IMG/VR virus record: IMGVR_UViG_3300042391_000634
Span: 1-64,000 of that record
Strand: one strand, 5' to 3'
Length of the DNA stretch: 64,000 nt
The translations under genes were made by a program, and so were the position numbers. How positions within the stretch are numbered: the first letter of the stretch is position 1; the number at the start of each line of letters is the position of its first letter. The notes under the pieces are model-generated. The model was not told the DNA's origin. It searched no databases and saw nothing but the letters and a program-made list of their open reading frames with translations. Below, piece by piece: positions 4,358-55,913 of the stretch.

Positions 4358-4514
4358 TATTTATAAATAAAACAAAAATGTCATCAAAATTTTTTAACAA
4401 TTCACAACAACCTAAAGTGGCTAAAGGAGATAAAAAACCAATACCAACTAAACCAATTAAGAACAATACTCAAATTAAGAAGACGGGAAGAGGTAAATAG
4501 GATATTTATATCTA

Positions 4515-6146: not shown

Positions 6147-7499
6147 TTAATTAACGACAATTTCATTTATAGTTATTGTTCCATCTAAATTACCATTTAA
6201 CGCAAGGAAGGTTAGTTTATTATTAACCTTAAATACTTTTACATAAGCCGGTGTAATTTTAGGAATATCTAAACCTTTATTATAATCCCCCATAACACCA
6301 TTATTATTCTTCCAAAATAATTTATTAATGTTAAGTGAATTTCCAGTTTTTAAAAGTTTACCGGCCCATCCATGTAATATAATATCAGGATAACCATCCT
6401 TATCAAAATCGATAATATCAAATTCTCTGAATTGTAATTGGTCAAATGTATAATCTAATCTATTATTAGAAGGTGTAAAGTTTCCTTTACCGTCACTATA
6501 CCAAATTTCAATACCATTGTAATTTGTTCCCTCTGTTGCAATTGCCAAATCAATATTACCATCTTTATTAAAATCGGCGGCTTTAATTGATGTTGAACCT
6601 CTATCGTCTGTTTTAAATATACCAAGAGGACCTGGATCCTTATCTAATTTATATTTCCCAAGAGTTGAGTTATATGAAAAAATACTAACACTATATCTAT
6701 CGTTTGGTTTTTGAAATGTAGGATTAAAACCATAATCTCCTCTAACAATTTCAGGACGAGAATCTCCATATAAATCTTGAATTAAAACTGCACCGCCGGC
6801 TTTTCCACCATAGAAATCTGAAGGGTCAAATATGTTATTGTTTTCGGTAAATGAACCATTACTATTTTGTGTATATGAATGAAGACCAAGATAATTATTA
6901 CCTTTTGTTCCCATGTGTAACCCTATAACATCAATTAAACCATCATTATTAATATCACCTGAAGATACCGAATGATAAAAACTATTAACGGTTGATATGT
7001 TTGAAAATGAAACTTTACTCCCTTCTGTTTTCATTAAAATTAAATTACCAAATGGCCATGGTTGACCATTTAATTCAGGACCAGAATCTGAAAATACCCA
7101 ACTTTGTTTTGTGGTATCAATACAAGTGTAGTTTCTACCACAACCCATAGAAGCCTCAGGATAACTATTTTCATAAGACCAATTATTATTTGTTTTTGTT
7201 AAATGTAAAGTTGGTATTAATGGATATGTATAAAATAATGTTGCAGGTATAATCAAATGTTCAATGTTATCTTTTTGATATAAAATAACACCAGGTATTG
7301 CCAAATTAACACCTTTAGCCACTATGTCGTTTGTAAAGTTTGGAACATTAAAACCAGATATTACTGTGGTTGTTAATGTATAAGGTGAAGTAGGTGGGAT
7401 CACAACTACAGGAGGTTCAATAACTACAGGGGGGACTACAGATTCCTTCTTACAAGATATTATTAATAAAAATAATATAAAATATAGAGTTTTTTTCAT
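6147..7499 (-). CDS. Lipoprotein with FG-GAP/VCBS-like repeats
   Basis: Lipobox LLIISC followed by KKES; repeats GDINNDGLIDVI, DLYGDSRPEIV, ADFNKDGNIDLAI, IDFDKDGYPDII. Confidence 0.8.
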   Translation of the reverse strand: MKKTLYFILFLLIISCKKESVVPPVVIEPPVVVIPPTSPYTLTTTVISGFNVPNFTNDIVAKGVNLAIPGVILYQKDNIEHLIIPATLFYTYPLIPTLHLTKTNNNWSYENSYPEASMGCGRNYTCIDTTKQSWVFSDSGPELNGQPWPFGNLILMKTEGSKVSFSNISTVNSFYHSVSSGDINNDGLIDVIGLHMGTKGNNYLGLHSYTQNSNGSFTENNNIFDPSDFYGGKAGGAVLIQDLYGDSRPEIVRGDYGFNPTFQKPNDRYSVSIFSYNSTLGKYKLDKDPGPLGIFKTDDRGSTSIKAADFNKDGNIDLAIATEGTNYNGIEIWYSDGKGNFTPSNNRLDYTFDQLQFREFDIIDFDKDGYPDIILHGWAGKLLKTGNSLNINKLFWKNNNGVMGDYNKGLDIPKITPAYVKVFKVNNKLTFLALNGNLDGTITINEIVVN

Positions 7500-11467: not shown

Positions 11468-14400
11468 ATGAAAACATTTAAGTTCCTCTCAAAGAAACAA
11501 ATACAAGTTCCTATACCCAATAGATATAGTAGTTTAAGTCCTGAGGATAGAAACATATACACAAAAGGATATTATGATGCATTTGATTGTTATAATCATA
11601 GTCGTTCGTTAGAATCACCATACAATCCACTTGTGGAAGAATATGAGTATGAATTATGGAGAGAGGGAGTTACGATGTATGAACGAAATAATAATGCATA
11701 ATGATTAAGGACTTCAAATTTTTTCAAGGTAAAAAAGAAAGAATAAATTGGCAACTAACCGGTTTATTAGATGATGCAACAAATGTTCCATTATTGATTG
11801 GTGTATTGGACATCACATACAAATATATTCAGGATAATAATTTAATAGATAATAATAGGGTTAATAATATATTGATTATTGTTATGACCAAATTATACAG
11901 AGACAAATATAATTCTTATAGTGATTATGATATTAGACGTAAGATTGATGAGGTTGCGGTTCATACCAATAGTGTAACAATAAGAAGATACATACAAGAA
12001 CTTGAAGAGGGTGCTTGGATGAGTATTGATGTTGAAGCGGAGATTAATCATATTATTTATGAAAAATGTAAATGGGAAGAACATGACTATGGATTTTAAA
12101 TTTTTTAAAGGGACACCTCCACCTAAATGGAGAACATACGGTGGATTGATGCATCCATTGGAAACCATAAGCACAAATTATATCAAACGAATAATGAAAC
12201 TTTTGGTAACTAATGGTACATTGCCTAATCAAAAAGATGGGAGAACGGCAACCGAGTGGTATATTATATTAGATAATGAATTAAAAAGAAGAAATGATTA
12301 AACCATTTAAATTCTTTTCAGGGATAAAAATACAATATATTCTAATAATCACCAAGGATACCGATACAACGTACAGCATCCCATTAGATATGTATGGACA
12401 TATAATGGAAGTTGCGGTGGGTTTACACAGGGAGAATATGATATTATTTTCACCAGTAGAGTATAGAGTAGAAAACGAAATTGGTGAGGGAGTAACTTAT
12501 TTCTATATGATAAATAATATTGTACCATATTTTAATATAACTAATAGAATAATGATAGAATATAGTGTAAAGTTTCCTGATACAGAATATTATTGTGATT
12601 TTACCACTCAAGAAAATATATCCTTATATGAAACCATTTAAGTTCTTCCAAAATAATATAAAAAGAAAATGGTATTTAAGGAGTGACCACCTCGGTCAAA
12701 TACAATGGATGTATAGACCTGTGGGGGTAATATTCTATATGGAAAATAGATGGGATGGAAATTTTTATACAGAGGAGATGAAGACAATGACGGTGACGGC
12801 TACAAGTAGATATATGTACTCATACAATCAGTTTATGGAAATGAATAGGGATAATATTATATTTGCATATGAATTCGTGGACAATGCAGATATAAGTAAT
12901 ATGATACATTATAACGAAGATAATTTTGATGATATGCCAAGGGATAGACGACTAATATTTAGAGGAGTAATAAGAAATAATGAAACCATTTAAGTTCTTC
13001 CAAAAAGAAGATTATTTTCTTTCAATAGCAAGAAGAGGTGCGGGGAGAACCATCGCTCAAGACCTTGTGCCGGTTCAACCATTGGGCTCACCTGATAATG
13101 ACCTTCATATTCTTAGGAATTCACTATACGGTGCACTGCGTACAAGAGAATGTGCGGTAATTGCATCATCCATCCGAAATTTTAATAATTGGAGAAATGA
13201 AACATTTGACAGAAGTAGTGTTTTCATTATAACCAATAGAGATTTCACACATACTAATGGAAATAACAATCAAACCACAAGATACAGGGCAATAACGCGA
13301 ATTGATGATTGTTATGGACTAATGTTCGATGATTATATTTTAACGGATAGAATCCACGATATATTATCAAGCGGATATAATGAAACTATAGACCATATTC
13401 ACCAACTAGTTGATGAGGTTAACCTACACACAAGAAACAATGAAACCATTTAAATTTTTTAGAACCCCTTTTAACCCAAGACAATACGATCTTGATTCAT
13501 TTACATTCATCGGTGTTAGTCCCATTAAAACTCATGAAGATGTTCAAGGAAGGTATAGAACAATGATTTTTATGAATAATGATACACGTCTACCACTCAC
13601 TGGAAATTTAATACACGAACACGAGGAAGCATTCCATATGGCGGACATAATTGAAATAAGGGGAAATCAAATATTCCAATTACCAAGACAAGAGGCGGAA
13701 TATATAAACGTAACATTAACATTCACACCAAATGAAACCATTTAAGTTCCTAACCAAACCAAATACAATCAATTACGAAGGTGAGTGGTCACGACATGTT
13801 ATTGGAATAGTTTATGATTATATTAACAATAGATATAGAGACACATATATATCAGAAACATTTGATGCTAAATATATTATTACCGAAACAACATATGAAC
13901 TCGGACAATTATCACGTGCTGTTGTTAAAGTATATCCTAATAGAGATACTAACATGATAATAACATATTGGGTAACCGTGGTAAACACATTTGCATTCAT
14001 AACACAACATAATGTTGAACACTATGCGACCATTTAAATTCCTAAACGATAATAAGAAAGATGATTTTCTTATCCCAACGATGGATGAAATTGCTAACGC
14101 ATTAATTGTTGGAAGAGAAGCATATCTAAATGGACATCCGGTAGAATATAATCCTTTTTTAAGACAACAAACATTTGACGCATTTGACGAGGGATGGGAA
14201 TTAGAACATTCATATGATATATTAAGAGACGCACAACAAAGAGCAAACAATGGACTTTAAATTCTTTCAAAAACCAAAACCAATACAACCACCAGGTAAT
14301 ATGTATCTGATGTTTAATATGGATGATGCTCTAATCAATGTGATAAGATGGTTACAATATCATAATTGGGAAATATTAAATAGTGAAACATATATGTCTC

Positions 14401-15511
14401 AGGTGAATGTACCAATCAATAATTGTTTTATAAGGATAACGAGTTGGAGAAGACATATTAATCCACCAATAAGAGTTCAAATAAAATATAGTGTGTTTGA
14501 AGCAAACACATTTTCAAGAAATTTCACATTTATTATGAATGAAGAAGAATTTTTAAGAAGAATAGATATAACAGGAATATGATAAAAGAGTTTAAATTTT
14601 TAAGTAATAACAAATCAATAGGAACTAATACTATTCCATATCCTGATGATTTAGTATGTCCTTTAATGAGAGAGGTATATAAGGCTGGTTATTTATGTGC
14701 AATGGTGGGAAATCAGATAAGTGATAATCGTTACGCAAATACACAATATGCTTATATGTGGAATAGAGGTTGGATTGATTACCAAATGCAAACTGTAAAT
14801 GAGAGAGTTTAAGTTCCTAAGAAATCCTTTATTAGTTACCATTGATGGGAAATCAATCTATCCGGGGACATTATTCTATAGTATGAATAAGATATGTATA
14901 ATATTACCAAGGAAGATAACACCCAAATATACAATAGTAACAAGATGTATCCATCCAATTTATAAGGATGTATTCAAACCTGATTACGATACATTAATGT
15001 ATTTCAGCACAAAAGAATCTGCCGAGTTCTATAAGAGTAGATTAATACATTGGGATGAACACGTTATTGGTGGTGAGGTATTCCATAACAACGCTGACAT
15101 AACATTAACATTTAGAAGATGATAAGACAATTTAAATTTTTATCGGGAGTGAAATCCATGTTGGATATGTATGGTAGAGAAATCAACTCAAATAACTATA
15201 GAACCATCAGTATAACCGGCAATATTCGTTTTCTAAAAGAATACCATAGAAGATTGGATTGTATTTATATTTCACATTATAATATGTTTAATGAATATCA
15301 TCCATTATTTAATGAATCGGTAGATTTATATAATAGAACGGTTGGATTTATAGAAGGAGGTCACATAACAACCCACGAAGAGATAAGGAGATTTGTTCAT
15401 AGCGCCTATTCAGATATGGTATATGGGATATTTGACCAGTATGAAATAGGTGGGGCAACAAATCAGGAGATATTAGTTGATACATATAACTTTATAAACC
15501 CAAGACGATGA
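11468..15511 (+). CDS. Tandem operon of 13 FKF-leader ORFs (starts 11468, 11701, 12089, 12294, 12628, 12980, 13440, 13732, 14024, 14250, 14579, 14799, 15119)
   Basis: Each begins M-x(1-3)-FKF(F/L). After the first two genes, each start overlaps the upstream stop by 4-14 nt. Several starts were reassigned from the ORF track. Confidence 0.8.
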
Positions 15512-15549
15512 TAAAGATTTTAAATACCTGAAGATGATATTTATATAGG

Positions 15550-16395
15550 ATGAAATTAATGGATATATTATTAGAGGATTGGGAAGATGATTACCGAAAT
15601 GTATCTCATAAGCTTAAACTTATGTATAAATTACTTAGAGTAGGGTCGGTTAAAATTAGTAAATTAATACCTGATTTTGAGACACCATTTTGGACAGGAT
15701 TTGATTGGATTGAAGATGGTGATGCATTGATAACATATGAACTACCAAGCGAATATCATTTAATACCTGGTAGTATAACTAGCATATATAGAATAGTAAT
15801 AAGAGGTATAACTATTAATTGTGAAAAATATCCAGCGTTAGCTGATGACATAGATATTAGGGAAGATTTATTAAGATATATTTTACGTAGAATTGAAAAT
15901 TATCTAATACCTACACTCCAAGAGGGAGACGAAATTGAGTTTAGTATAAGAAAAAAACATGAAGAGAATATTATGTTTAAGAATGTCGTAAATGAAAGTG
16001 TTGTTGATGATAAAGAAAATGATTATGATACCGTTGTTAAAAAGGCACCAACAATTTTCAAAGCACTCAAGAAAGGTAAGATAACAATGGAGGTTGATGC
16101 AATAAGATTATTTTATCGAGGTGCAACGGACCCACAAAAATACACATTTGATTATGATTTAGGAGATGTATACATTGTTGAAACAGATCCATTTGAAAAT
16201 AACTACAATGTTAAAGTTTTAATACCGGCAATTAAAATTAACTGTGACGAAAACCCAAATTTAAATAATATTCAAACAATTAAAATGGACATTCTTAATA
16301 TTGTTAAGAAAAAATTTAACAACTTTGGATTGAACATTATTCTTAGAGCAACAAAATTTCGTTTAAAACATAATGGAAAGTGGATTATACCTTAA
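15550..16395 (+). CDS. CTS-like leader (MKLMDILLED) plus two KALKKG domains
   Basis: TATTTATA at 15538; KLKLMYKLLRVG and KKAPTIFKALKKG joined by a VVNES linker. Confidence 0.7.
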   Translation: MKLMDILLEDWEDDYRNVSHKLKLMYKLLRVGSVKISKLIPDFETPFWTGFDWIEDGDALITYELPSEYHLIPGSITSIYRIVIRGITINCEKYPALADDIDIREDLLRYILRRIENYLIPTLQEGDEIEFSIRKKHEENIMFKNVVNESVVDDKENDYDTVVKKAPTIFKALKKGKITMEVDAIRLFYRGATDPQKYTFDYDLGDVYIVETDPFENNYNVKVLIPAIKINCDENPNLNNIQTIKMDILNIVKKKFNNFGLNIILRATKFRLKHNGKWIIP

Positions 16396-16639
16396 TATAT
16401 AAATCCTCAGGTTTAGGTGGTTTTATTTCAAACACAACTGGTCTTTTCTTTTCCCATTTCTCTAAAATCTGTTGAGCCAAGGACACCATAGCCCTTTCAT
16501 AGTATTCCTCACCATATATTGGGACGATTATACTTTTATACATGTCTAATGTATCTGAAATGTTGAGACTATCAACTTTCTTTTTAACCGTGATGGTTTC
16601 ACTAAAATACTTATACGATAATGAGATTGGTATATTCAT
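16385..16639 (-). CDS. Hypothetical protein
   Basis: 84-aa ORF; upstream TATATTTG on the minus strand near 16644-16651. Confidence 0.55.
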   Translation of the reverse strand: MNIPISLSYKYFSETITVKKKVDSLNISDTLDMYKSIIVPIYGEEYYERAMVSLAQQILEKWEKKRPVVFEIKPPKPEDLYIKV

Positions 16640-16651
16640 TCCACAAATATA

Positions 16652-16690
16652 CTAGAATATTCTAGAATATCACAAATAAAGTTATCCACA
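16652..16690. promoter_or_regulatory. Palindrome CTAGAATATTCTAG plus perfect DnaA box TTATCCACA in a divergent intergenic region
   Basis: Palindrome at 16652-16665; DnaA box at 16682-16690. Confidence 0.55.
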
Positions 16691-16739
16691 TTTAAAATCG
16701 TGTTTTTAAATCTCGAATATTTTTATTATATTTAATGAT

Positions 16740-17162
16740 ATGTTGTCTAAATTTAGATTTTTCAGGGGTATAGTTAGTGCAAGGATTGTCAGTATTGATG
16801 GTGCTTTAGAAAGACTAACAAGGACACCTGTTAGTCATATTCCAATACCCGATACTCTTACAACCTTAGTAGAGATACAACAATTTAGGGCAGGATGGAG
16901 ATCGTGTGAGTTTGGAAGAAACATATACGATAATCCATATAGTAATAGAGAAGCTCTAATATATTCATTACATAGAGCATGGGAATATGGATTTACTGAA
17001 TGTTTTAATAATAGAAGAGTTAATAGAGATGAAGAGGTTTATTTAGAAGGATGGGCGACAGCTCAATTAGGGTTACCATTAAATGAAAACCCACACACAT
17101 ATGGTTCAAACCAATTTAATATGTGGTATATAGGATGGAATGACTTTGTTGATAATCATTAA
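16740..17162 (+). CDS. FKF-leader protein with two RMF/CrpP-like repeats
   Basis: FRAGWRSCEFGRNIYDNPY...AWEYGF and YLEGWATAQLGLPLNENPH...MWYIGW. Confidence 0.6.
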   Translation: MLSKFRFFRGIVSARIVSIDGALERLTRTPVSHIPIPDTLTTLVEIQQFRAGWRSCEFGRNIYDNPYSNREALIYSLHRAWEYGFTECFNNRRVNRDEEVYLEGWATAQLGLPLNENPHTYGSNQFNMWYIGWNDFVDNH

Positions 17163-17166
17163 AAAT

Positions 17167-17493
17167 ATGCGAGACTTCAAATTTCTTACCAAGAACGATA
17201 CAATAAACTTTCATGGACAAATGTCCATTGAAGCGCTCGGATATTTTGATGATTACGTTAATCGTATAATTAGATATGAAATCACAACAACAACCGCAAC
17301 ATATAAGATAGCAGATTACACTTATGGTGAAGGTAACGTTGTGGCGGGAACCGTCAACGCATATCCATTAGATGCTCCCAATATCATGGTCACCTACACT
17401 ATAAGGGGTGGAGAGATTACATCACATACAATACATATAGATTATTGGAATACGATGGGGCAATTGATAAATACAATAAGACGAGAGGATTAG
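17167..17493 (+). CDS. FKF-leader protein (MRDFKFLT), paralog of 13732-14037
   Basis: Aligns by eye: FKFLTK..TIN..G......G...DY.N... Confidence 0.65.
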   Translation: MRDFKFLTKNDTINFHGQMSIEALGYFDDYVNRIIRYEITTTTATYKIADYTYGEGNVVAGTVNAYPLDAPNIMVTYTIRGGEITSHTIHIDYWNTMGQLINTIRRED

Positions 17494-17545
17494 TCGGTAG
17501 CAATACTATAATACAATTCACCACGTTTATAAGATATTTATGTAG

Positions 17546-18229
17546 ATGAAAATACAAGCATTATTCATCAGTGATGTCCACTTAGGTTCTAAAGGTTCAA
17601 ATGCAGAACAAGTCTTAGATTTACTCAAACAATATCAACCCGAATATCTATTCTTAGTTGGTGATATAATAGATGGATGGTTACTTAAACGTAGGTTCCG
17701 TTGGCCTCAATCACATACAAATGTATTAAGAAAGATAATGTCATATTCAAAGAACGGAACCAAAGTAATTTATATACCAGGAAATCACGATGAGTTCTTA
17801 AGAGAGTATGGTGAGTTTTCTTTCGGCAATATAGAAATACACAATGAATATGTATGGAATAATACTTTTATTACACACGGAGATTTATATGATGGTGTGG
17901 TTAAACTTAAATGGTTGGGTATCTTAGGGTCAATAGGTTATGATATGGCAATAACAATAGATAGAAAATTAAAGAAATTGGGAATGAAACGTTCTTTATC
18001 TAAGTTCTTAAAAGATAAGGTAAAGGAAGCTGTTAAATTCATTACACAATTTGAGGTGGAGTTAACCAGACAAGCAAAGAAACATCACTGTACATCCGTT
18101 ATATGTGGTCATATTCATCATCCTGAGGATAGAGATATTGATGGAATAAGATATTTAAATTGTGGGGATTGGATTGAGAACAATAGTTATATCATATACA
18201 ACAACAATGAATACACAGTCATTAAGTAA
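17546..18229 (+). CDS. Metallophosphoesterase, LpxH/PlcP-like (UDP-2,3-diacylglucosamine hydrolase family)
   Basis: FISDVHLG, LVGDIIDGW, YIPGNHDE, HGDLYD, VICGHIH, YLNCGDW. Confidence 0.88.
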   Translation: MKIQALFISDVHLGSKGSNAEQVLDLLKQYQPEYLFLVGDIIDGWLLKRRFRWPQSHTNVLRKIMSYSKNGTKVIYIPGNHDEFLREYGEFSFGNIEIHNEYVWNNTFITHGDLYDGVVKLKWLGILGSIGYDMAITIDRKLKKLGMKRSLSKFLKDKVKEAVKFITQFEVELTRQAKKHHCTSVICGHIHHPEDRDIDGIRYLNCGDWIENNSYIIYNNNEYTVIK

Positions 18230-18923
18230 TCAATTAACAATAGTCATTCCATCAAAGAATGAAAATAGAACGTTATATGATTGTATCTATAACATATCTA
18301 AACAAACCAACATTGCAGGGATAAAGATAATAATAGCAGATGTATCAGATGAAGAAGAATCTATATGGTATTTATGGAAATTACAATCGGACTTTAAATA
18401 TTCATTAAACATAGAGGTAATAGAAGGGGGATATCCATCTCAGGGAAGACTTAACGGATCAAAACTTGTAACAACCCCATATATGTTATTCTTGGATGCA
18501 GATATATTCTTAACCAATAAGGATATAATCGTGGAGTGTATGAAATATAAGAAGGACTTAATTACGGTCCCGTTTTATACGGATAAACCATACAGATGGG
18601 TATTCAGATTATTTGATATGTTCCAATCAATATCCTCGTTATTGGGAACTCCATTTGCTGTAGGAGGATTTCAGTTATGGAACACAAAGACGTATTGGGA
18701 AATAGGAGGATACAATCCAGAGGAGTTATTCGCAGAGGACTATTCGTTATCAAAGATGGTTATGTCAAAGAACTTTAAGGTGGTTAATATAAAAGGAACA
18801 TACACATCACCAAGACGATTTAAATCTAAGGGTGTATTATGGATGTTCAATATAATGATTAAATCTTATCTCAATAGAAACAACCCATCCTTTTTTAAAC
18901 AGACCCACAACTATTGGACATAA
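18207..18923 (+). CDS. Glycosyltransferase family 2
   Basis: TIVIPSKNE, IIIAD, LFLDAD, GGYNPEELFAED. Confidence 0.85.
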   Translation: MNTQSLSNQLTIVIPSKNENRTLYDCIYNISKQTNIAGIKIIIADVSDEEESIWYLWKLQSDFKYSLNIEVIEGGYPSQGRLNGSKLVTTPYMLFLDADIFLTNKDIIVECMKYKKDLITVPFYTDKPYRWVFRLFDMFQSISSLLGTPFAVGGFQLWNTKTYWEIGGYNPEELFAEDYSLSKMVMSKNFKVVNIKGTYTSPRRFKSKGVLWMFNIMIKSYLNRNNPSFFKQTHNYWT

Positions 18924-18950
18924 CTATTTCATGGGATATTTATAAAGGTA

Positions 18951-19784
18951 ATGAAATTATTAGATATTATAAAAGAAGATGTGAGGTACTTTAAGAAAGA
19001 AGAACCTAGTGAGGAAAAGAGGGTAAAAACCATTTTCAAAGCACTTAGAAATGGTATTGTAAAGGTTCCACACCCAAGGACAAACAACATCATCAAGTTT
19101 AGATATCATATAAGTGATAATGTATTTTATAGATGGGAAAATTATATGAGTGAGAAGTGCCTTACTATCATTACCAGCAACTTCCCTGAAGAAGGTATAA
19201 CCATTTACTGTGATGATAAAGATGTGATAGATATGTGTACAAATAACACAGAATCTATCTCAAAGAACCCAACTGGTATTCATCTAAGGGAAATGTTCAT
19301 GAATAAACTTAAAAATAGATTCAATAAATTTCAGGTTAGTTTTTATGTTAATAAACAAGGTATGAAGTTTGTTTTAGAAGAACCAACCGAACTAATCAAT
19401 GAGAATGAAGAGGACGATAGAATAATAAAAAAGGTAGGGGTAATATTCAAAGCTCTTAATAAAAAAATGTATCGTGAGAACAAAGATTTTAAGTTTTATT
19501 TTGTTCTTCCCGATAAATTTAAGGTTTTATTAAATGATACCCCCGAAATAGAACGGCACAGACAAATTAGAAGAGAATATGGTTTTTTATATGTTCAGGT
19601 GGGAAATGATGGTGAAAACAATGATGTTAAATTCTACTATAAAAAAGAAGGTGATTATGAATTAAATAGATTAAATATCAATACAAATGATCAGTATAAT
19701 TATAACCTGTTTATTGTTAACGAAAAGTTTAAACCATTTAATATAAAACTAATATATAAAAATAGAGCAGGCAAGTGGGAATAA
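18951..19784 (+). CDS. CTS-like leader (MKLLDIIKED) plus two KALKKG domains
   Basis: TATTTATA at 18937; KRVKTIFKALRNG and KKVGVIFKALNKK joined by a LINEN linker. Confidence 0.7.
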   Translation: MKLLDIIKEDVRYFKKEEPSEEKRVKTIFKALRNGIVKVPHPRTNNIIKFRYHISDNVFYRWENYMSEKCLTIITSNFPEEGITIYCDDKDVIDMCTNNTESISKNPTGIHLREMFMNKLKNRFNKFQVSFYVNKQGMKFVLEEPTELINENEEDDRIIKKVGVIFKALNKKMYRENKDFKFYFVLPDKFKVLLNDTPEIERHRQIRREYGFLYVQVGNDGENNDVKFYYKKEGDYELNRLNINTNDQYNYNLFIVNEKFKPFNIKLIYKNRAGKWE

Positions 19785-20830
19785 TGAAATTAATAGACAC
19801 ACTTAGTGAGGATGAGGAGAAAAAATTAATCAAGAAGGCCAAGTTAATTTTTTCTATATTAAAGAAGGGAACAATCACTCGTAGAGATGGTGTGTCATTT
19901 AGTTATGAGCTCAAGGATAATATGGTCCCAAGAATCGTAAAAGGTGAGGTAGAGATAAGTGCGTTCATTACCGAGATCATAGAAAGAACCTACTGTCCTA
20001 TCAATGAACATGCGATGAAAGATTTAATTATGGACAAATTCAATCACTTCAATATTAATGCAAATTTATATTATACTTCCAATAGTCATGTAGAGAAATA
20101 CAAAGGAAAGAAACCGTGGGAAGAACAAAGGGAACTAAACGAATCCAAAGAGGATAACGAAAAACTTATAAAGAAGGTTAAGACCATTTATAAAGCCATA
20201 AGTGGTAGTATTATTCGTAAAGGACATTTCGGTAATATTACATATGAATTACCTCGTGAATATGATATTCAAATAGATGTAAATGACGATCCTTTTGTAA
20301 AGGTCGGTAGGAATGGGACAGACAATGAGATTAAATTCTATTATGTCGATGGTACAAGTGGTGAAGTTAAACAATATAGGTTAAACAACCACGAATATCA
20401 TTTATTTGTAAGAGAGATAGAAAGACGTAAGTTTAAACCGTTTAATATTGTATTATGGTATGAACCAAATGAGAACGTGATTCAACCTATAAATGAGGCT
20501 CTAATGAGGTATACAGAAGATGATTTAACCGACAAGGACAGGAAGAAAGTTAAACTTATATATGATTTATTTAAAACGGGGAGGTATATAGATGATGATA
20601 CGAAATATGAATATGTTCTTCCTGATGAGTATTATGTATCCATAGATGATGAAACGGGAATGCCTGTTGTTGTATTAACGATGAATCCGTCACAGACATT
20701 AGATTTATATATGGTTTTAACCAATACATATATTCCTAAGGTAGATAAAGAATACAATAACTTATATAAGGATACAAAGAGAAGAATTAAAGAGAAGTTT
20801 AATAATTTTAACATAGATATTATATTTTAA
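19784..20830 (+). CDS. CTS-like leader (MKLIDTLSED) plus three KALKKG domains
   Basis: KKAKLIFSILKKG, KKVKTIYKAISG and KKVKLIYDLFKTG; linkers LNES and INEA. Confidence 0.7.
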   Translation: MKLIDTLSEDEEKKLIKKAKLIFSILKKGTITRRDGVSFSYELKDNMVPRIVKGEVEISAFITEIIERTYCPINEHAMKDLIMDKFNHFNINANLYYTSNSHVEKYKGKKPWEEQRELNESKEDNEKLIKKVKTIYKAISGSIIRKGHFGNITYELPREYDIQIDVNDDPFVKVGRNGTDNEIKFYYVDGTSGEVKQYRLNNHEYHLFVREIERRKFKPFNIVLWYEPNENVIQPINEALMRYTEDDLTDKDRKKVKLIYDLFKTGRYIDDDTKYEYVLPDEYYVSIDDETGMPVVVLTMNPSQTLDLYMVLTNTYIPKVDKEYNNLYKDTKRRIKEKFNNFNIDIIF

Positions 20831-20858
20831 TGTAAAGATTTATGTGTATATTATACAA

Positions 20859-21473
20859 ATGAGAGTTTTAATCCTAACACACCCAAGAAGCGGGGGAATG
20901 TCCTTAATGAATTATATTCAGAAAGAATTAGATTACAATCAATATCATGAACCATTTTTCGACAATCTAAGTCACGGTTTAACTGATGAAGATATCAATA
21001 CAAAATTATTAGTAGAAGATAACATAGTGGTTAAAGACTTTCCATTTCTTATTAAAGAAAGGGGGTATGATATTAATGATGTGATATCTAAATTCGATAA
21101 GGTAATTATTCACCATAGAGGTAATCATAGAGATGTGGCAATTAGTTTAACCTATTTTCAATATGGATATGGTAGTAATTTACATGAAACATATAAAGTA
21201 ACGGACGAATGGATAAAGGATAATGAGGATAAGATAGAACAAATGATGGTGAATACGAATGAAATGTTCAATACAATTGAAAATATGAAGAATGAGGGGT
21301 GTCTAAGAACAAGTTACGATGGGATATATAACGATAAATCAGATGTACCAAGACTATTAAAGTATCTAAACATATATAGCCCGATTTATTTAGACATATT
21401 AGATAAAAGACACAAATTACAAAATGGGGAGGTAGGAATGGGTAATGTTAAGATTAGACCAAAATTAATATGA
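20859..21473 (+). CDS. Sulfotransferase-like (PAPS-binding loop) protein
   Basis: N-terminal ILTHPRSGGMSL, then EPF, and IIHHR.N.RD.AIS. Confidence 0.55.
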   Translation: MRVLILTHPRSGGMSLMNYIQKELDYNQYHEPFFDNLSHGLTDEDINTKLLVEDNIVVKDFPFLIKERGYDINDVISKFDKVIIHHRGNHRDVAISLTYFQYGYGSNLHETYKVTDEWIKDNEDKIEQMMVNTNEMFNTIENMKNEGCLRTSYDGIYNDKSDVPRLLKYLNIYSPIYLDILDKRHKLQNGEVGMGNVKIRPKLI

Positions 21474-21497
21474 TATTTTTGATATATTTATAAAGAC

Positions 21498-21947
21498 ATG
21501 AAGTTATTAGATATAGTAAGAGAAGAGGAAGATAAACAGAATTATCTTATTAAACAAAGAAAAAAGGTTAGACATATACACTCAGCACTAAAAAGGGGTA
21601 AAATTACTATAGATAATATACAATATAACTATGTTCTTGGTAATGATTTTGATATTGATGTTATATATCGTAACGGGTATGAGGAAACAGAGGTTAGGTT
21701 TAAGGAAGAAATGTTAACACCAAAATATAGAGATAAGATTTTAAAATTATATAAGGTTAATCCTGATGGGGAGGAAGAATATGTTCCTTATGGACATACT
21801 ATGAAGTCTTATAAAGAATATTATCATGCTATGAAATTTGATAATCCAACATATGAATCTGCGTGGGATATAATTAAAGATAAGTTTAAAAATTTTAGAA
21901 TACGTATATATCCTTTTAACGTTACTCAAACTAACCTTGATTTATAA
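21498..21947 (+). CDS. CTS-like leader (MKLLDIVREE) plus one KALKKG domain
   Basis: TATTTATA at 21485; KKVRHIHSALKRG...IKDKFKNFRI. Confidence 0.7.
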   Translation: MKLLDIVREEEDKQNYLIKQRKKVRHIHSALKRGKITIDNIQYNYVLGNDFDIDVIYRNGYEETEVRFKEEMLTPKYRDKILKLYKVNPDGEEEYVPYGHTMKSYKEYYHAMKFDNPTYESAWDIIKDKFKNFRIRIYPFNVTQTNLDL

Positions 21948-21951
21948 AGAC

Positions 21952-22311
21952 ATGAAACTATTAGATATACTTAACGAGGATGCTGAGGTGGACGTTCCAA
22001 AAGAGAAACGTAGGGTTAAAACCGTATTCAAGGCATTAAGGAAAGGGGTTATGTTTGTTCCATTTCTCGGATATAAGATTAAATATGAACTTAATAACGA
22101 CTACCAATTAAGTGTAGGGATAGGTAAAAGTCATAATGACACCATTTTATTTGTTCCATCAGATGATAAGACACCAAAGATAAAGTTATATGAGATTGGT
22201 TCTGACGGGGTGGAAAGATATTTCGAGGTAAATGGATATGACTCCATATATCAACTGATGTGGCAAAAAATATCAGAGAGATTCAAACATTTCCACATAC
22301 ATCTAAGATAA
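21952..22311 (+). CDS. CTS-like leader (MKLLDILNED) plus one KALKKG domain
   Basis: RRVKTVFKALRKG...ISERFKHFHI. Confidence 0.7.
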   Translation: MKLLDILNEDAEVDVPKEKRRVKTVFKALRKGVMFVPFLGYKIKYELNNDYQLSVGIGKSHNDTILFVPSDDKTPKIKLYEIGSDGVERYFEVNGYDSIYQLMWQKISERFKHFHIHLR

Positions 22312-22332: not shown

Positions 22333-22968
22333 TTAAATAAGTTGTTTGGCATGTGTTTTCATTTGTCCCATAACGTAATCACATATGTTTTCCTGAACTC
22401 CACGTGTATAATGACACTCCTCTTGTTTATGATATTCATTATCGTTCAACCATGTATCGAAATCCGTGGGGAAGGTAATCTTTGTTCCATACTCTAAAAG
22501 GGAATTAGACCATTCATTCTCAACAATAAAGATATAGTATATATGAACCCCCATAAGATGTAATTGTTTGAAGATGATATCAAACTGATGAAAGAGTCTC
22601 CTATTGTAATCTTCGTTATAATCTAACTGATGGGTTATGATATCCATAATATAATCTTTTCTAAAATTACGTGTATTGTTTAACTCTCTATCATTGTAGT
22701 AACGATTGGTTGACATCACCTTATTTTTTTCCCTATCGTAATAGGAACCTCTAACAAAGAAGGATAAGTTAAAGAATAAGATATCACCCTTTTTAATGTC
22801 CGTTACGCAGGATAATAGTTTGTTGAGTATCATCTCATTAGACCCACCAGATATTACTCCACGTGAATTGAATTTGTATTTAATCCTTTCAGATATAAGA
22901 CCAACAAAGTGTGTGTCTTCTTTACCCACCGTACCGTAACTATCCCCAAAATGATATATTGTCCCCAT
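22333..22968 (-). CDS. SGNH/GDSL-like hypothetical protein
   Basis: FGDSYG block I, GGSNE block II, C-terminal ECHY; similar to 54832-55590. Confidence 0.5.
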   Translation of the reverse strand: MGTIYHFGDSYGTVGKEDTHFVGLISERIKYKFNSRGVISGGSNEMILNKLLSCVTDIKKGDILFFNLSFFVRGSYYDREKNKVMSTNRYYNDRELNNTRNFRKDYIMDIITHQLDYNEDYNRRLFHQFDIIFKQLHLMGVHIYYIFIVENEWSNSLLEYGTKITFPTDFDTWLNDNEYHKQEECHYTRGVQENICDYVMGQMKTHAKQLI

Positions 22969-23672: not shown

Positions 23673-24773
23673 ATGGATAATAAACAATTCAAAGAACTAA
23701 AATCTCAGGGGAAACACAAATGTACACACTGTAAAGAAATAAAACCTATAAGTGAGTATTATGTTAATAAGAATTATAACACAATAAAGGGTCCGTGTAA
23801 GAAGTGTTATGTCTCATATAATAAAAGATTCAAAAAACATAAGGAAAAGGGAACCAAATGGTTATTGTCTTTAAGGGATAATGGAACAAAGAGATGTTAT
23901 AGTTGTATGGAGATATTACCATTTGATAAGTTTGGTAAGAATAAGAAGTCTATTGATGGACATATGCCATCATGTAAAGTATGTAAGAGTAGGATTGATA
24001 AGGAATATAGGGATTGTGATAAGAATAGACAAAAACTATTGGATAAGAAGAAGGAATACTATCAAAAGATTAAAGGTACGGAAATACATCGTATTAATCA
24101 GAAGAAGAGTAATGAAAAGAGAGATTATAAGGACGAATATAAAAAGTTAAGGAGTAACGAATGGAGAAGAGCAAAGGATGATTTGAGAAAATTAATTACT
24201 TCGTCATTTAAGAAAAGGGAATGGGTTCAGAAGGATACAAAGACCGAACAACTATTAGGTGCTGATTACTTCACCGTAAAAGGATATATTGAAAGACAGT
24301 TTCTTAAAGGAATGACTTGGGAGAATCATGGTGAATGGCATTTGGATCACATTATACCTTTGGACTCTGCGGGTAAAGATAAGGATATATTATATAGATT
24401 GTTTTATTATAAGAATTTATGTCCCGTATGGTGGAAAGATAATTTACAAAAGAGTTACAAAATACCTGAAGTGTGTACACTATGGAGTAATCCCATAGTT
24501 CCCTATAAAGAATTTAATCAGATATTTGAACCTACCCATAAGGGTAATGTTGGATCTAAACTATTCATTGAGAATGGAACAAGATTTGGAAGATTAATTA
24601 CATTGGAAGAATCTGAACCCGTTATATTAAACTCAGGTTGGAATAGAAGGATGTTTAAATGTCTATGTGATTGTGGTGTTGAAAAGGTCATTAGTATGCA
24701 GTCTTTAAGGTCTAAAAAAACGGTATCTTGTGGTTGTTACCATAAGGAAGTTATTAAAGGTAAGAGGAAATAA
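23673..24773 (+). CDS. Homing-endonuclease-like protein: Zn-finger repeats, HNH-like core, C-terminal CDCG/SCGC domain
   Basis: KCTHCKEIKP, RCYSCMEILP, CKVCK; WENHGEWHLDHIIPL; GTRFGRLIT...KCLCDCG...TVSCGC. Confidence 0.75.
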   Translation: MDNKQFKELKSQGKHKCTHCKEIKPISEYYVNKNYNTIKGPCKKCYVSYNKRFKKHKEKGTKWLLSLRDNGTKRCYSCMEILPFDKFGKNKKSIDGHMPSCKVCKSRIDKEYRDCDKNRQKLLDKKKEYYQKIKGTEIHRINQKKSNEKRDYKDEYKKLRSNEWRRAKDDLRKLITSSFKKREWVQKDTKTEQLLGADYFTVKGYIERQFLKGMTWENHGEWHLDHIIPLDSAGKDKDILYRLFYYKNLCPVWWKDNLQKSYKIPEVCTLWSNPIVPYKEFNQIFEPTHKGNVGSKLFIENGTRFGRLITLEESEPVILNSGWNRRMFKCLCDCGVEKVISMQSLRSKKTVSCGCYHKEVIKGKRK

Positions 24774-40610: not shown

Positions 40611-40622
40611 ATATTTATACAT

Positions 40623-43965: not shown

Positions 43966-44069
43966 CCTCGTATACCCCCGTTCACAAGTTTCCGACGCCG
44001 GAACCCCCATTGAAATTTGTCCCTCTCTTTTTGTGTCCGTTAATAATAGTGGGATATTTATATGTGTAT

Positions 44070-45380
44070 ATGAAATTAATTGATATTATATTTGAGAGTG
44101 TTGTTGATTTATCTGAAGTAGTAACTAAAGATGAGTTTATTAAAAGGGCACAACAAGTTCATAAGGATGAAAACGGTAATCCAAAATATAGATATAACAA
44201 TGTTATTTATAAGAACACTAGAGTTCCTATAACTGTTACATGTCCAAAACATGGAGACTTTACGGTGTCTCCTGATAATCACACAAGAGGTAGAGGTTGT
44301 AAAATGTGTGGATATGAAAGTACATCTAAAAAGAAAAGAATGACAAAAGATGAGTTTGTTAAAAAAGCACAACAAGTTCATAAGGATGAAAACGGAAACC
44401 CTTCATACAATTACGATAAGGTAAATTATACAACAGGTAGAGTAAAAGTTCCTATCACATGCCCAATACACGGAGATTTTCTTATTGCACCTAATAGTCA
44501 TTTAGCCAATCATGGATGTCCAAAATGTGGATGGAAAAGGTTGGCACTAGTTAAATCTGATACTAAAGACAATTTCGTTAAAAAAGCGGAACAAATTCAT
44601 AAAGATGAGAATGGAAACCCCATGTATGTTTATAATGACGTAACTTATAAAAATGCCATGACAAAGGTCGATATTACTTGTCCAATACATGGAAATTTTA
44701 ATATGAGTCCAAATGCACATTTAGTGGGTCAAAAATGTCCAAAGTGTTCATTAATCAATAGGTCTAATTTAAGGAGATTCACAAAAGATGAGTTTATTAA
44801 AAGAGCACAACAATCAAATAAAGACGATAATGGAAATCCACTATACACATATGATAATGTAAATTATCATAATACTACTGAGAAAGTGAATATTACTTGT
44901 CCTATACACGGAGATTTTCTAATGTCACCTCAATCTCACTTAATAGGTTCAGGATGTTCTAAATGTAGTGAATCAAAAGGGGAGAAATCAATTAGAAAAC
45001 ATTTAAAAGAAATGAATATCACATTTAACTCACAAGAGAGATTTGGTAGTTGTTTTTCTGTAGGAGAAAAAAGTAAAAGATGTTATAAACTTCCTTTTGA
45101 CTTTTTCATACCAAACATAAAAACCGCAATTGAGGTCGATGGTACTCCACATTTCCAACCTAAATTCGGAGAGGAACAACTTAACTCAACAATATTCAAC
45201 GATAAAATAAAAAATAAATTTGTTAAATCGTCTAATCAAATTAATAAATTAATTAGGTTATATTATGATGGAAAAAATATGGATGAATTAATTTCAGAAT
45301 TAAATCGTCTTCTCAAAGAAAAAACATCTAACAAAATAGTTTTATCTAAAGGTTACCCTAAAGGGGGTTGGAACAAATAA
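44070..45380 (+). CDS. Leader plus four DUF723-like CPxHG repeats plus PD-(D/E)XK (Vsr/DUF559-like) endonuclease
   Basis: F...AQQ.HKDENGNP.Y.Y..V.Y.....V.ITCP.HG.F...P..H..G.GC.KC x4; SKGEK.I, LPFDFFIP....AIEVDG..HF. Confidence 0.8.
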   Translation: MKLIDIIFESVVDLSEVVTKDEFIKRAQQVHKDENGNPKYRYNNVIYKNTRVPITVTCPKHGDFTVSPDNHTRGRGCKMCGYESTSKKKRMTKDEFVKKAQQVHKDENGNPSYNYDKVNYTTGRVKVPITCPIHGDFLIAPNSHLANHGCPKCGWKRLALVKSDTKDNFVKKAEQIHKDENGNPMYVYNDVTYKNAMTKVDITCPIHGNFNMSPNAHLVGQKCPKCSLINRSNLRRFTKDEFIKRAQQSNKDDNGNPLYTYDNVNYHNTTEKVNITCPIHGDFLMSPQSHLIGSGCSKCSESKGEKSIRKHLKEMNITFNSQERFGSCFSVGEKSKRCYKLPFDFFIPNIKTAIEVDGTPHFQPKFGEEQLNSTIFNDKIKNKFVKSSNQINKLIRLYYDGKNMDELISELNRLLKEKTSNKIVLSKGYPKGGWNK

Positions 45381-48676: not shown

Positions 48677-48688
48677 TATTTATATCTA

Positions 48689-55885: not shown

Positions 55886-55913
55886 ATTAAAAATATAAGG
55901 ATATTTATATATA

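What the first reader, a model, noticed from the sequence alone, without database searches (positions are those of the whole stretch)
17546..18923. PlcP-like phosphoesterase plus GT2: possible phage-encoded membrane lipid remodelling
Seen: a complete calcineurin-like motif set plus the SLSKFLKDKVKEAVKFI segment, overlapping a GT2 gene. Known: the phosphate-starvation phospholipase PlcP is usually annotated as LpxH-like and is often adjacent to a glycosyltransferase that converts the released diacylglycerol to glycolipid. Inference: the phage could free phosphate from host phospholipids or alter lipid A or the membrane. The TATTTAT motif upstream suggests late expression.
Basis: partly seen in the sequence, partly recalled or inferred. 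Interest (0 to 1): 0.6.

Follow-up and report, generated by a model that had tools for sequence, protein, structure and literature searches.

The report
Phage PlcP-like lipid phosphoesterase plus glycosyltransferase
A giant lake phage carries a tightly linked two-gene unit, an enzyme of the bacterial PlcP phospholipid-cleaving family (labelled LpxH in databases) plus a phage-specific sugar transferase, which probably lets the phage strip phosphate from host membrane lipids and replace them with phosphorus-free glycolipid.

Summary
ORF 17546-18229 (227 aa) is a complete calcineurin-type metallophosphoesterase (MPE) with an LpxH-like helical insert. It overlaps by 23 nt a 238-aa GT2 glycosyltransferase (18207-18923).

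The window is the start of a 335.6-kb freshwater jumbo phage with a distant T4-like terminase.

The MPE is not LpxH. It fails the LpxH equivalog cut-offs, keeps His where proteobacterial LpxH has Arg, and is split from LpxH by a 99-100% supported long branch.

It groups instead with bacterial proteins, 33-44% identical, that sit in classic plcP contexts: directly upstream of GT21 or GT-B glycosyltransferases or an OlsF-like ornithine-lipid synthase, or next to a phytase.

About 60 of 80 related phage loci keep MPE and GT2 adjacent, in either gene order, while the flanking genes vary.

The GT2 belongs to an almost phage-only family. It is not orthologous to Agt or Pgt, and its acceptor is unproven.

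It also precedes the terminase, portal and endolysin-like genes, so late expression is plausible.

Homologues in pelagiphage, cyanophage and marine T4-like phages show that viral "lpxH" genes are PlcP-family.

Substrates and physiology are inferred, not shown.

The parts
17535..17541 (+). TATTTAT upstream element, ending 4 nt before the MPE start codon; probably a late-type promoter or initiation element for the two-gene operon
   Evidence: It is the most enriched upstream 7-mer in the genome (77/399 genes against 5.4 expected). It ends 4-8 nt before the ATG in 40 genes, including the terminase, portal and endolysin-like genes. It is conserved at the same spacing in 20 of 28 distinct MPE>GT2 loci although the sequence further upstream differs.
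17546..18229 (+). PlcP-family (LpxH-fold) metallophosphoesterase, 227 aa
   Evidence: Pfam Metallophos E 7.7e-15. LpxH equivalogs score 44 bits against a cut-off of 134 and 37 against 190. The motif is GNHD, not GNRD. Tree placement with PlcP-context proteins, split from LpxH at 99-100% SH-aLRT. The top 24 Foldseek hits are LpxH structures.
17894..18082 (+). Helical insertion (about residues 117-179) between the HGD and GHxH motifs; cationic and amphipathic; predicted lipid- and membrane-binding lid
   Evidence: AlphaFold2 gives two long helices at 122-144 and 151-179 with pLDDT 50-62. It aligns with the LpxH helical insertion domain (PMC5016852). It has 16 K/R against 6 D/E and a peak hydrophobic moment of 0.64.
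18207..18923 (+). Phage-specific small GT2 (GT-A fold) glycosyltransferase, 238 aa, overlapping the MPE by 23 nt
   Evidence: Pfam Glycos_transf_2 E 4.3e-8. Invariant DxD (D97, D99), E177-D178 and R203-R204-F205. Model pLDDT 91. GT-A fold, Z 17-19.6. It abuts the MPE in about 60 of 80 viral loci, in either gene order. Distant family members are also next to an MPE.
18792..18920 (+). C-terminal 43 residues of the GT2: basic and aromatic tail, predicted membrane-interface element
   Evidence: 8 K/R, 0 D/E, 9 aromatic residues, no transmembrane segment. Helices 203-208, 210-222 and 227-231 in the model.

Best explanation
The two overlapping genes form one operon of a freshwater jumbo myovirus.

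Gene 1 encodes a metallophosphoesterase of the PlcP clade, presumably Mn-dependent. It has the same two-domain architecture as LpxH: a dinuclear metal core plus a helical lid that holds acyl chains. Unlike proteobacterial LpxH, it keeps the catalytic His of ordinary phosphodiesterases.

Gene 2 encodes a small inverting GT-A glycosyltransferase with a DxD metal site, an ED catalytic-base motif, and a basic, aromatic C-terminal tail.

Proposed mechanism:
1. Both proteins dock on the cytoplasmic face of the host inner membrane through their cationic amphipathic elements.
2. The phosphoesterase cleaves the glycerol-phosphate bond of host glycerophospholipids, giving diacylglycerol and a soluble phospho-head group.
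3. Host phosphatases then feed that phosphate into synthesis of the 335-kb phage genome.
4. The GT2 transfers a sugar from a nucleotide-sugar to the diacylglycerol, giving a phosphorus-free glycolipid that keeps the membrane intact until lysis.

The likely host is a low-GC FCB-group bacterium, probably Bacteroidota, in a lake. From general knowledge, lakes are often phosphorus-limited.

Shown here: family placement, exclusion of LpxH, operon structure, conserved pairing, a shared late-type upstream element, and predicted peripheral-membrane features.

Inferred: the substrates, the products, the phosphorus benefit and the host.
For: 1. Not LpxH. NCBIfam PRK05340 scores 44 bits (cut-off 134) and TIGR01854 scores 37 and 24 bits (cut-off 190). 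[quoted passage not shown] A profile of the family scores phage and PlcP-like proteins 199-350 bits, true LpxH 49-60, and Bacteroidota LpxH-like 80-90. The trees split LpxH plus LpxH-like from the rest at 99-100% SH-aLRT on long branches. Cellvibrio, Pleionea and a gammaproteobacterial MAG each carry a true LpxH (248-328 bits) besides the phage-like paralogue.

2. PlcP context of the cellular relatives. The downstream gene is a GT21 (163 bits) in Paracoccus, a Glyco_trans_1_3/GT4 enzyme in Prolixibacteraceae, Ginsengibacter and Verrucomicrobia, and an OlsF-like acyltransferase in Pleionea. The upstream gene in Draconibacterium is a phytase. These match the plcP neighbourhood types described in PMC4796936.

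3. Pairing. The GT2 abuts the MPE in about 60 of 80 viral loci, downstream in most and upstream in one sub-lineage. The flanking genes are not conserved: 0-3 loci each, against 85 for the MPE and 67 for the GT2. Distant GT2 family members are also next to an MPE.

4. Fold. The top 24 hits are LpxH structures, consistent with an MPE core plus helical insert.

5. Membrane features.

6. Phosphorus link in other phages. The Mosig homologue is adjacent to a phosphate ABC transporter gene. S-SRM01 carries its homologue in the hli/psbA auxiliary-gene island. This genome carries PhoH.

7. Habitat. The region is held in lake and freshwater metagenome runs from 20 studies.
Against: - No experimentally verified PlcP sequence could be placed in the tree. 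Orthology rests on synteny and taxonomy.
- The GT2 is not related to Agt (GT4/GT-B) or to Pgt (GT21; hhalign E 0.34), and its fold does not reveal the acceptor.
- About 20 of the 80 related loci have the MPE with no GT2 within 4 kb. Mosig and S-SRM01 have no adjacent GT either.
- The phage proteins have a shortened insert and lack the C-terminal tail of the bacterial homologues, so the substrate may differ.
- A late-type upstream element is not the timing one would first expect for supplying phosphorus to DNA synthesis.
- The insert is modelled at low confidence (pLDDT 50-62).
- The trees are quick searches with SH-aLRT support only, and the donor lineage is unresolved.
- No RNA data were found.
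Confidence: 0.5

Rival explanations
1. Envelope-glycan or lipid-carrier modification. The GT2 works like the phage transferases GtrB or TarP on a polyprenyl-phosphate or a surface polymer. The phosphoesterase processes a pyrophosphate-linked lipid or nucleotide-sugar intermediate. The result changes the host surface, for receptor masking or superinfection exclusion.
For: The best structural matches of the GT2 include the polyprenyl-phosphate mannosyltransferase PcManGT (Z 19.6) and the prophage teichoic-acid transferase TarP. The invariant Arg residues R81, R203 and R204 could bind a phosphate on the acceptor. The LpxH fold is that of a lipid pyrophosphatase.
Against: The Z scores are tied with many unrelated GT2 enzymes. 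The GT2 has no transmembrane helices, unlike GtrB- or DPMS-type enzymes. No flippase or GtrA/GtrC-like partner lies beside it. The MPE's cellular relatives sit in phosphorus-starvation lipid operons, not glycan operons. A late-type element fits superinfection exclusion poorly.
Confidence: 0.2
2. Lysis helper. The phosphoesterase is a late phospholipase that weakens the host inner membrane at the end of infection, and the GT2 has a separate role.
For: The same upstream element precedes the endolysin-like, terminase and portal genes. The protein has a cationic amphipathic membrane-binding insert. About a quarter of related loci have the MPE without the GT2.
Against: The tight pairing, overlapping and independent of gene order, argues that the two enzymes work together. 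The gene is not next to the endolysin-like gene (319736-321145). Homologues in Mosig and S-SRM01 lie among auxiliary metabolic genes, not lysis genes.
Confidence: 0.12
3. It is a genuine LpxH-type UDP-2,3-diacylglucosamine pyrophosphatase that boosts or alters host lipid A synthesis, as the database labels say.
For: JGI, NCBI and KEGG-based surveys label it LpxH. The nearest solved fold is LpxH. Bacteroidota LpxH-like paralogues also have GNHD, so His alone does not exclude this role in that phylum. The cellular clade member L089 lies 3 kb from lpxA.
Against: It fails both LpxH equivalog cut-offs by a wide margin. It is separated from both proteobacterial LpxH and Bacteroidota LpxH-like proteins at 99-100% support. 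The Saprospirales MAG has its own LpxH-like gene at 71 bits. Homologues occur in a phage of SAR11. From my own knowledge, Alphaproteobacteria use LpxI rather than LpxH. A partner GT2 has no place in the Raetz pathway.
Confidence: 0.06
4. It is a soluble nucleotide or cyclic-nucleotide phosphodiesterase used against host signalling or defence systems.
For: Calcineurin-type phosphoesterases include cyclic-nucleotide phosphodiesterases such as Rv0805, which is the next-best fold hit after LpxH (E 1e-6).
Against: There is no significant PADLOC match. The family-specific helical insert and the invariant NCGDWIEN motif are shared with the PlcP-context proteins. The conserved GT2 partner would be left unexplained.
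Confidence: 0.04

Closest known systems
PlcP, the phosphate-starvation phospholipase C of Sinorhizobium meliloti (SMc00171), Phaeobacter sp. MED193, SAR11 HTCC7211 and Pseudomonas aeruginosa, with its partner glycosyltransferases Agt and Pgt
   Same: It is a calcineurin-type metallophosphoesterase routinely annotated as LpxH-like. It keeps GNHD. It groups in a clade with bacterial genes that lie directly upstream of glycolipid or ornithine-lipid synthesis genes (PMC4796936). It is itself fused in an operon with a glycosyltransferase.
   Different: It is phage-encoded and 227 aa long. It has a shortened insert and lacks the C-terminal tail of the bacterial proteins. It is preceded by a phage late-type element rather than a Pho box. 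Its partner is a phage-specific 238-aa GT2, not Agt (GT4) or Pgt (GT21). No verified PlcP could be compared directly.
LpxH (UDP-2,3-diacylglucosamine pyrophosphatase; PDB 5B49, 5K8K, 6PH9)
   Same: It has the same two-domain architecture, an MPE core plus a helical insertion, and the same seven metal ligands. LpxH is the best solved-structure match.
   Different: About 19% identity. His81 replaces Arg80. It fails the equivalog cut-offs and sits in a separate clade. Genomes that have the phage-like paralogue also have a true LpxH.
Phage phosphorus-acquisition auxiliary genes (pstS, phoA, phoH of cyanophages and pelagiphages)
   Same: The proposed benefit is the same: relieving phosphorus limitation of phage replication. 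The Mosig homologue lies beside a pstS-like gene, and this genome has phoH.
   Different: The proposed phosphorus source is the host's own membrane lipids rather than external phosphate. The proposed route needs two enzymes and creates a replacement lipid.
Phage glycosyltransferases that modify host envelope polymers (TarP, GtrB)
   Same: They are phage-borne GT2 enzymes with a GT-A fold. TarP is the top Foldseek hit for the GT2 model.
   Different: 14-18% identity. No TarP trimerisation domain or GtrB transmembrane helices were seen. The partner here is a lipid phosphoesterase rather than GtrA/GtrC.

Membership tests
LpxH (UDP-2,3-diacylglucosamine diphosphatase) | Scores above the curated equivalog cut-offs (NF003743 134 bits; TIGR01854 190 bits) | tested here: not met
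   44 bits and 37 bits; 24 bits in the genome search. True LpxH from Cellvibrio, Pleionea and a gammaproteobacterial MAG score 248-328 bits.
LpxH (UDP-2,3-diacylglucosamine diphosphatase) | Arg in place of the catalytic His of the GNH motif (Arg80 of PaLpxH), which binds the beta-phosphate (PMC5016852) | tested here: not met
   The query and all 28 family members have GNHD. The four gammaproteobacterial LpxHs have GNRD. Caveat: Bacteroidota LpxH-like paralogues also have GNHD.
LpxH (UDP-2,3-diacylglucosamine diphosphatase) | Groups phylogenetically with LpxH | tested here: not met
   LpxH plus LpxH-like are split from the phage and PlcP-like clade at 99% and 100% SH-aLRT on long branches.
LpxH (UDP-2,3-diacylglucosamine diphosphatase) | MPE core with a helical insertion domain between the HGD and GH motifs | tested here: met
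   The model has helices 122-144 and 151-179 inserted in the core. The top 24 Foldseek hits are LpxH. PlcP-like proteins share this feature, so it does not discriminate.
PlcP (phosphate-starvation phospholipase C, metallophosphoesterase type) | Complete calcineurin-type dinuclear metal site with the catalytic His retained | tested here: met
   D10, H12, D40, N80, H81, H111, H189 and H191 are invariant. Pfam Metallophos E 7.7e-15.
PlcP (phosphate-starvation phospholipase C, metallophosphoesterase type) | Groups with proteins encoded in plcP-type operons (upstream of Agt/Pgt glycosyltransferases or other phosphorus-free-lipid genes), apart from LpxH | tested here: met
   Neighbour scans, trees and the context types in PMC4796936. 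The phage clade branches from an unresolved polytomy inside this group.
PlcP (phosphate-starvation phospholipase C, metallophosphoesterase type) | Sequence similarity to an experimentally verified PlcP (the literature criterion is BLASTP E<1e-40 to MED193_17359) | not testable with these tools
   No tool route led to MED193_17359, PB7211_983, SMc00171 or PA3219. The genomes reached were unnamed, and the biochemistry paper PMC6052262 is not held.
PlcP (phosphate-starvation phospholipase C, metallophosphoesterase type) | Mn-dependent release of diacylglycerol from PE, PG or PC | not testable with these tools
   This needs an enzyme assay.
PlcP (phosphate-starvation phospholipase C, metallophosphoesterase type) | Pho-regulon control (a Pho box upstream) | not tested
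   The upstream region is only 52 nt and holds the phage TATTTAT element. No Pho-box model for the unknown host was available.
Pgt-type processive lipid glycosyltransferase (GT21) | Significant similarity to Glyco_transf_21 or to a plcP-linked Pgt | tested here: not met
   The Pfam GT21 score is borderline: 21.9 bits against a 21.7 cut-off. The profile against the Paracoccus plcP-linked GT21 gives hhalign E 0.34.
Agt-type glycolipid glycosyltransferase (GT4, GT-B fold) | GT-B fold and GT4 family domains | tested here: not met
   The phage enzyme is a single-domain GT-A/GT2.
GT2 inverting glycosyltransferases (GT-A) | GT-A fold with a DxD metal motif and an acidic catalytic base | tested here: met
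   PF00535 E 4.3e-8. Invariant D97-x-D99 and E177-D178. Z 17-19.6 to many GT2 structures.
Polyprenyl-phosphate glycosyltransferases (GtrB/DPMS type) | GT-A domain followed by interface helices and C-terminal transmembrane helices | tested here: inconclusive
   The best Z is to PcManGT (19.6), but it is tied with soluble GT2 enzymes. The protein has a basic, aromatic C-terminal tail but no transmembrane segment.

The most novel reading that the evidence does not exclude
Phages of aquatic bacteria scavenge phosphorus from their host's own membrane. The genes that virome surveys list as viral 'lpxH' under LPS biosynthesis would then be a PlcP-family phospholipid-cleaving auxiliary gene spread across T4-like myophages of SAR11, cyanobacteria, other marine hosts and freshwater FCB-group hosts. 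In the freshwater jumbo-phage lineage it has recruited a phage-only GT2, and possibly the nearby sulfotransferase-like gene, to build a replacement phosphorus-free (perhaps sulfated) glycolipid. That would be a virus-encoded membrane-lipid renovation pathway with no orthologue of the bacterial partner enzymes.
Probability: 0.35. Interest if true: 0.78.

Novelty: new variant of a known kind. Interest (0 to 1): 0.62.

Why it matters
Phosphorus often limits both lake bacteria and their phages, and a 335-kb genome is costly in phosphorus. From general knowledge, membrane phospholipids are a sizeable phosphorus store in the cell.

A phage-encoded route that converts them to glycolipid would be a new class of auxiliary metabolic function: the phosphorus would come from inside the host cell rather than from external uptake.

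It would also change how infected cells contribute to aquatic lipid and phosphorus budgets.

It would correct a systematic annotation error. Thousands of viral and many alphaproteobacterial proteins are labelled LpxH, and virome surveys count them as lipopolysaccharide biosynthesis.

The phage-specific GT2 family could also be a new type of lipid glycosyltransferase.

Tried and rejected
- Nucleotide search of the phage collection with the region: no match.
- GT21/Pgt lead for the GT2: rejected by hhalign, E 0.34.
- Complex prediction on MPE plus GT2: no verdict (score 0.00). This counts neither for nor against binding.
- GDSL/SGNH lead: the window ORF at 22333-22968 has an FGDSYG N-terminus but no family match. 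It shows no similarity to the GDSL-like neighbours in L088 or L002, and those two are not similar to each other.
- Defence-system scan (PADLOC): nothing significant.
- PstS in the genome: not found with PF12849.
- RNA evidence: no listed holder of the region is on record as RNA.
- MAG and SAG contigs in the phage clade: I first took all four to be mis-binned phage. L089 and L090 proved cellular, L088 proved phage, and L087 is too short to tell.
- The careful tree search did not finish in the time allowed. The quick IQ-TREE results with SH-aLRT support were used.
Full report
**Setting.** The window is the first 64 kb of a 335,630-bp IMG/VR virus record that CheckV rates as complete. GC content is about 31%. 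The large terminase is a distant T4-superfamily type: 30% identical to a Microcystis myovirus, 28% to Flavobacterium myoviruses, and 27-28% to uncultured huge phages. The region is held in lake and freshwater metagenome runs from 20 separate studies, and none of the holders is on record as RNA. The protein has about 8,000 scored relatives in public data. The top 120 are 84-100% identical, and many lie on contigs of 100-330 kb.

**Observation.** ORF 17546-18229 (227 aa) and ORF 18207-18923 (238 aa from the ATG) are both present.
- The first is a calcineurin-type metallophosphoesterase (Pfam E 7.7e-15). Every metal-ligand motif is invariant across 28 phage and bacterial homologues, and so is a family-specific NCGDWIEN motif.
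- The second is a GT2 glycosyltransferase (E 4.3e-8). Across 22 diverged phage homologues it has invariant DxD, ED and RRF motifs.
- The two genes overlap by 23 nt.

**Is it LpxH?** No.
- It reaches 44 and 37 bits against LpxH equivalog cut-offs of 134 and 190.
- In its alignment to solved P. aeruginosa LpxH it reads GNHD where LpxH has GNRD. The LpxH structure paper states that this His-to-Arg change holds for LpxH in all species of known sequence and that Arg80 binds the beta-phosphate (PMC5016852). The four gammaproteobacterial LpxHs I fetched all have GNRD.
- One caution: the Bacteroidota LpxH-like paralogues have GNHD. For a Bacteroidota host this residue alone is therefore not decisive.
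- The decisive evidence is the profile scores and the trees. A profile of the phage and PlcP-like family scores its own members 199-350 bits, true LpxH 49-60, and Bacteroidota LpxH-like 80-90.
- Two quick maximum-likelihood trees split LpxH plus LpxH-like from everything else at 99% and 100% SH-aLRT on long branches.
- Cellvibrio, Pleionea and a gammaproteobacterial MAG each carry a genuine LpxH in addition to the phage-like paralogue.

**Is it PlcP-like?** The cellular relatives are 33-44% identical and come from Planctomycetota, Cellvibrio, Pleionea, Verrucomicrobia, Bacteroidota, Aurantimonas and Paracoccus. They sit in the neighbourhoods that define plcP in the literature (PMC4796936):
- directly upstream of a GT21 Pgt-type transferase in Paracoccus (163 bits);
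- directly upstream of GT-B/GT4 transferases in three lineages;
- directly upstream of an OlsF-like ornithine-lipid synthase in Pleionea;
- next to a phytase in Draconibacterium (all).

In addition, 191 of 251 sampled genomes in the Aurantimonas family carry an orthologue about 50% identical. I could not fetch an experimentally verified PlcP by name, so this membership rests on synteny and phylogeny, not on direct comparison.

**Structure.** The AlphaFold2 model has a confident core and a low-confidence two-helix insert (pLDDT 83 overall). Its top 24 Foldseek hits are all LpxH structures, followed by a drop to Rv0805. This shows the shared architecture: a core plus a helical lid that, in LpxH, buries the acyl chains. 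None of the listed hits is described as PlcP. The insert is strongly cationic and amphipathic, and the protein has no transmembrane segment. The phage proteins have a shorter insert than the bacterial homologues and lack their C-terminal tail.

**The pair is a module.**
- In about 60 of 80 related viral loci a homologue of the GT2 abuts the MPE. It is usually downstream with the same overlap, but in one sub-lineage it is upstream.
- The flanking genes are found in only 0-3 of those loci each, against 85 for the MPE and 67 for the GT2.
- The module is embedded in arrays of fast-evolving paralogous small genes.
- A library-wide profile search found 374 clusters at E<1e-30, of which about 100 are full-length at 225-245 aa.
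- A distant member lies in a phage-like contig directly after a Metallophos gene. Another is preceded by an MPE fragment.
- No homologue of this GT2 lies beside any of the bacterial MPEs.

The GT2 therefore looks like a phage-specific, non-orthologous replacement for Agt or Pgt. It is unrelated to the Paracoccus GT21 (hhalign E 0.34). Its model (pLDDT 91) matches many GT2 enzymes about equally: PcManGT Z 19.6, BcsA 19.1, WrtF 18.5, TarP 17.6. The acceptor is not revealed. The C-terminal 43 residues carry 8 basic, 0 acidic and 9 aromatic residues, which fits binding at a membrane surface. About 20 related loci, and the Mosig and S-SRM01 phages, have the MPE without an adjacent GT.

**Expression signal.**
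- TATTTAT is not over-represented in the window as a whole.
- It is the most enriched 7-mer just upstream of start codons genome-wide: 77 of 399 crude gene calls against 5.4 expected.
- It usually ends 4-8 nt before the ATG, and the extended consensus is aTATTTATA.
- Genes that carry it include the large terminase, the portal protein and an endolysin-like gene.
- It is conserved 4-6 nt before the MPE start in 20 of 28 distinct MPE>GT2 loci, although the sequence further upstream differs completely.

Since the phage has a T4-like terminase, and T4 late promoters read TATAAATA (my own knowledge), a late-type element is a reasonable reading. The very short spacing suggests near-leaderless transcripts. 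This is inference without RNA data.

**Host and origin.**
- The jumbo-phage MPE clade (96-99% support) contains four contigs from MAGs or a single-cell genome.
- L089, a 100-kb contig of a marine Bacteroidetes single-cell genome with 30% GC, is truly chromosomal. It encodes LpxA, EF-P, SucD, a FabG-like reductase, an SPFH protein, MscL and an E1 dehydrogenase. The same genome also has an ordinary Bacteroidota PlcP-like copy.
- L090 is also cellular: a SusC-like receptor lies downstream.
- L088 is a mis-binned phage contig. L087 is too short to judge.
- This points to low-GC FCB-group bacteria as the source or host. The deeper branching order is an unresolved polytomy.

**Wider occurrence in phages.**
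- Pelagibacter phage Mosig has a homologue (40% identity) beside a phosphate ABC transporter gene.
- Freshwater cyanophage S-SRM01 has one (34%) in its hli/psbA/ferredoxin island.
- One of the most widespread marine clusters related to Mosig's protein lies in T4-like contigs, between baseplate genes and near dsrC.
- Mosig's closest named cellular relatives are Alphaproteobacteria. From my own knowledge, that class uses LpxI rather than LpxH.
- Virome surveys list viral lpxH under lipopolysaccharide biosynthesis. No paper in the searched library links plcP with auxiliary metabolic genes.

**Mechanism and rivals.** The best-supported reading is a phage-borne version of the PlcP-glycosyltransferase lipid-renovation pathway. 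The phosphoesterase would cleave phospholipid to diacylglycerol plus a phospho-head group, and the GT2 would glycosylate the diacylglycerol. This would free phosphorus while preserving the membrane.

I put about 0.8 on 'PlcP-family, not LpxH', about 0.4 on 'the GT2 glycosylates diacylglycerol', and 0.5 on the overall account.

The rivals are:
- an envelope-glycan or lipid-carrier modifying pair (0.2);
- a late lysis-helper phospholipase (0.12);
- a genuine LpxH (0.06);
- a soluble nucleotide phosphodiesterase (0.04).

PADLOC shows no defence-system match. The complex prediction gave no verdict.

**Limits.** Substrates, products, timing and host are all inferred. The trees are quick searches with SH-aLRT support only. 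The insert is modelled with low confidence. No verified PlcP, LpxG or broad LpxH sample is in the tree. Read laying was not used, because no RNA run holds the region. No step needed referral.

Noticed in passing
G000 genome-wide; in the window e.g. 4503-4509, 15538-15544, 17535-17541, 18937-18943, 21485-21491, 40612-40618, 48677-48683, 55902-55908: The element aTATTTATA ends only 4-8 nt before the start codon of at least 40 genes, including the terminase, portal and endolysin-like genes. That is too close for a normal leader with a ribosome-binding site, so it suggests near-leaderless late transcripts or an unusual initiation signal.
   Followed up: partly
window 13732-17493 and 15550-16395, 18951-22311: The module is embedded in arrays of paralogous small genes. 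One set has N-termini like M..FKFL (13732, 14012, 14250, 14579, 14799, 15119, 16740, 17140). A second family starts MKLLDI..ED (15550, 18951, 19775, 21498, 21937). Some pairs are detectable by BLASTP, but almost none are conserved in related phages.
   Followed up: partly
window 20844-21473 (+): This 209-aa ORF has no Pfam, NCBIfam or PHROG family. By language-model features it resembles phage clusters carrying Sulfotransfer_3 and Stf0 sulfotransferase domains (0.96-0.97). Homologues lie close to the MPE in L002 and L020. It could modify the GT2 product.
   Followed up: partly
window 22333-22968 (-): This 211-aa ORF starts MGTIYHFGDSYG, which resembles block I of SGNH/GDSL hydrolases. No family match was found, and it has no similarity to the GDSL-like genes near the MPE in L088 and L002.
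   Followed up: yes
L088 1784-3994 and 5645-6340: This contig, binned as a Saprospirales MAG, is phage. It has a thymidylate synthase gene split by an I-TevI/NUMOD3 homing endonuclease and an Mtd-like tropism determinant. A GDSL-like lipase/acylhydrolase (32.0 bits, cut-off 32.9) lies 1 kb after the MPE.
   Followed up: partly
L190 and L191 (marine metagenome contigs of 31-41 kb): A very widespread marine T4-like phage lineage carries a PlcP-like MPE between gp53 and gp2/tail-tube/baseplate genes, together with a DsrC gene and a Tn7 TnsA-like endonuclease gene directly upstream.
   Followed up: no
L154, L163, L180 (Bacteroidota genomes): The Bacteroidota LpxH-like paralogues (71-85 bits to TIGR01854) keep GNHD rather than GNRD. 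This runs against the published statement that LpxH has Arg at this position in all species of known sequence (PMC5016852).
   Followed up: no
P0110 / L002; proteins: There is systematic mislabelling. Thousands of phage proteins and alphaproteobacterial PlcP-like proteins are named UDP-2,3-diacylglucosamine diphosphatase or LpxH. One (NCX06266.1) is attributed to an Actinobacteria MAG but lies on a phage-like contig with the GT2 next to it.
   Followed up: partly
window 23673-24773 (+) and 44010-45380 (+): The first ORF is a probable homing-endonuclease-type protein that combines endonuclease VII, HNH and Lar-like matches. The second is a 456-aa protein with DUF723, treble-clef zinc-finger and TreK matches.
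   Followed up: no
window 6147-7499 (-): A 450-aa protein with FG-GAP repeats on the minus strand, in an otherwise plus-strand block.
   Followed up: no
L089 (Bacteroidetes single-cell genome, contig of 100 kb): A cellular copy of the phage-type MPE lies in a housekeeping region (lpxA, efp, sucD, fabG-like, SPFH | MPE | methyltransferase, mscL). The same genome also has an ordinary Bacteroidota PlcP-like paralogue. The direction of transfer between phage and cell is open.
   Followed up: partly
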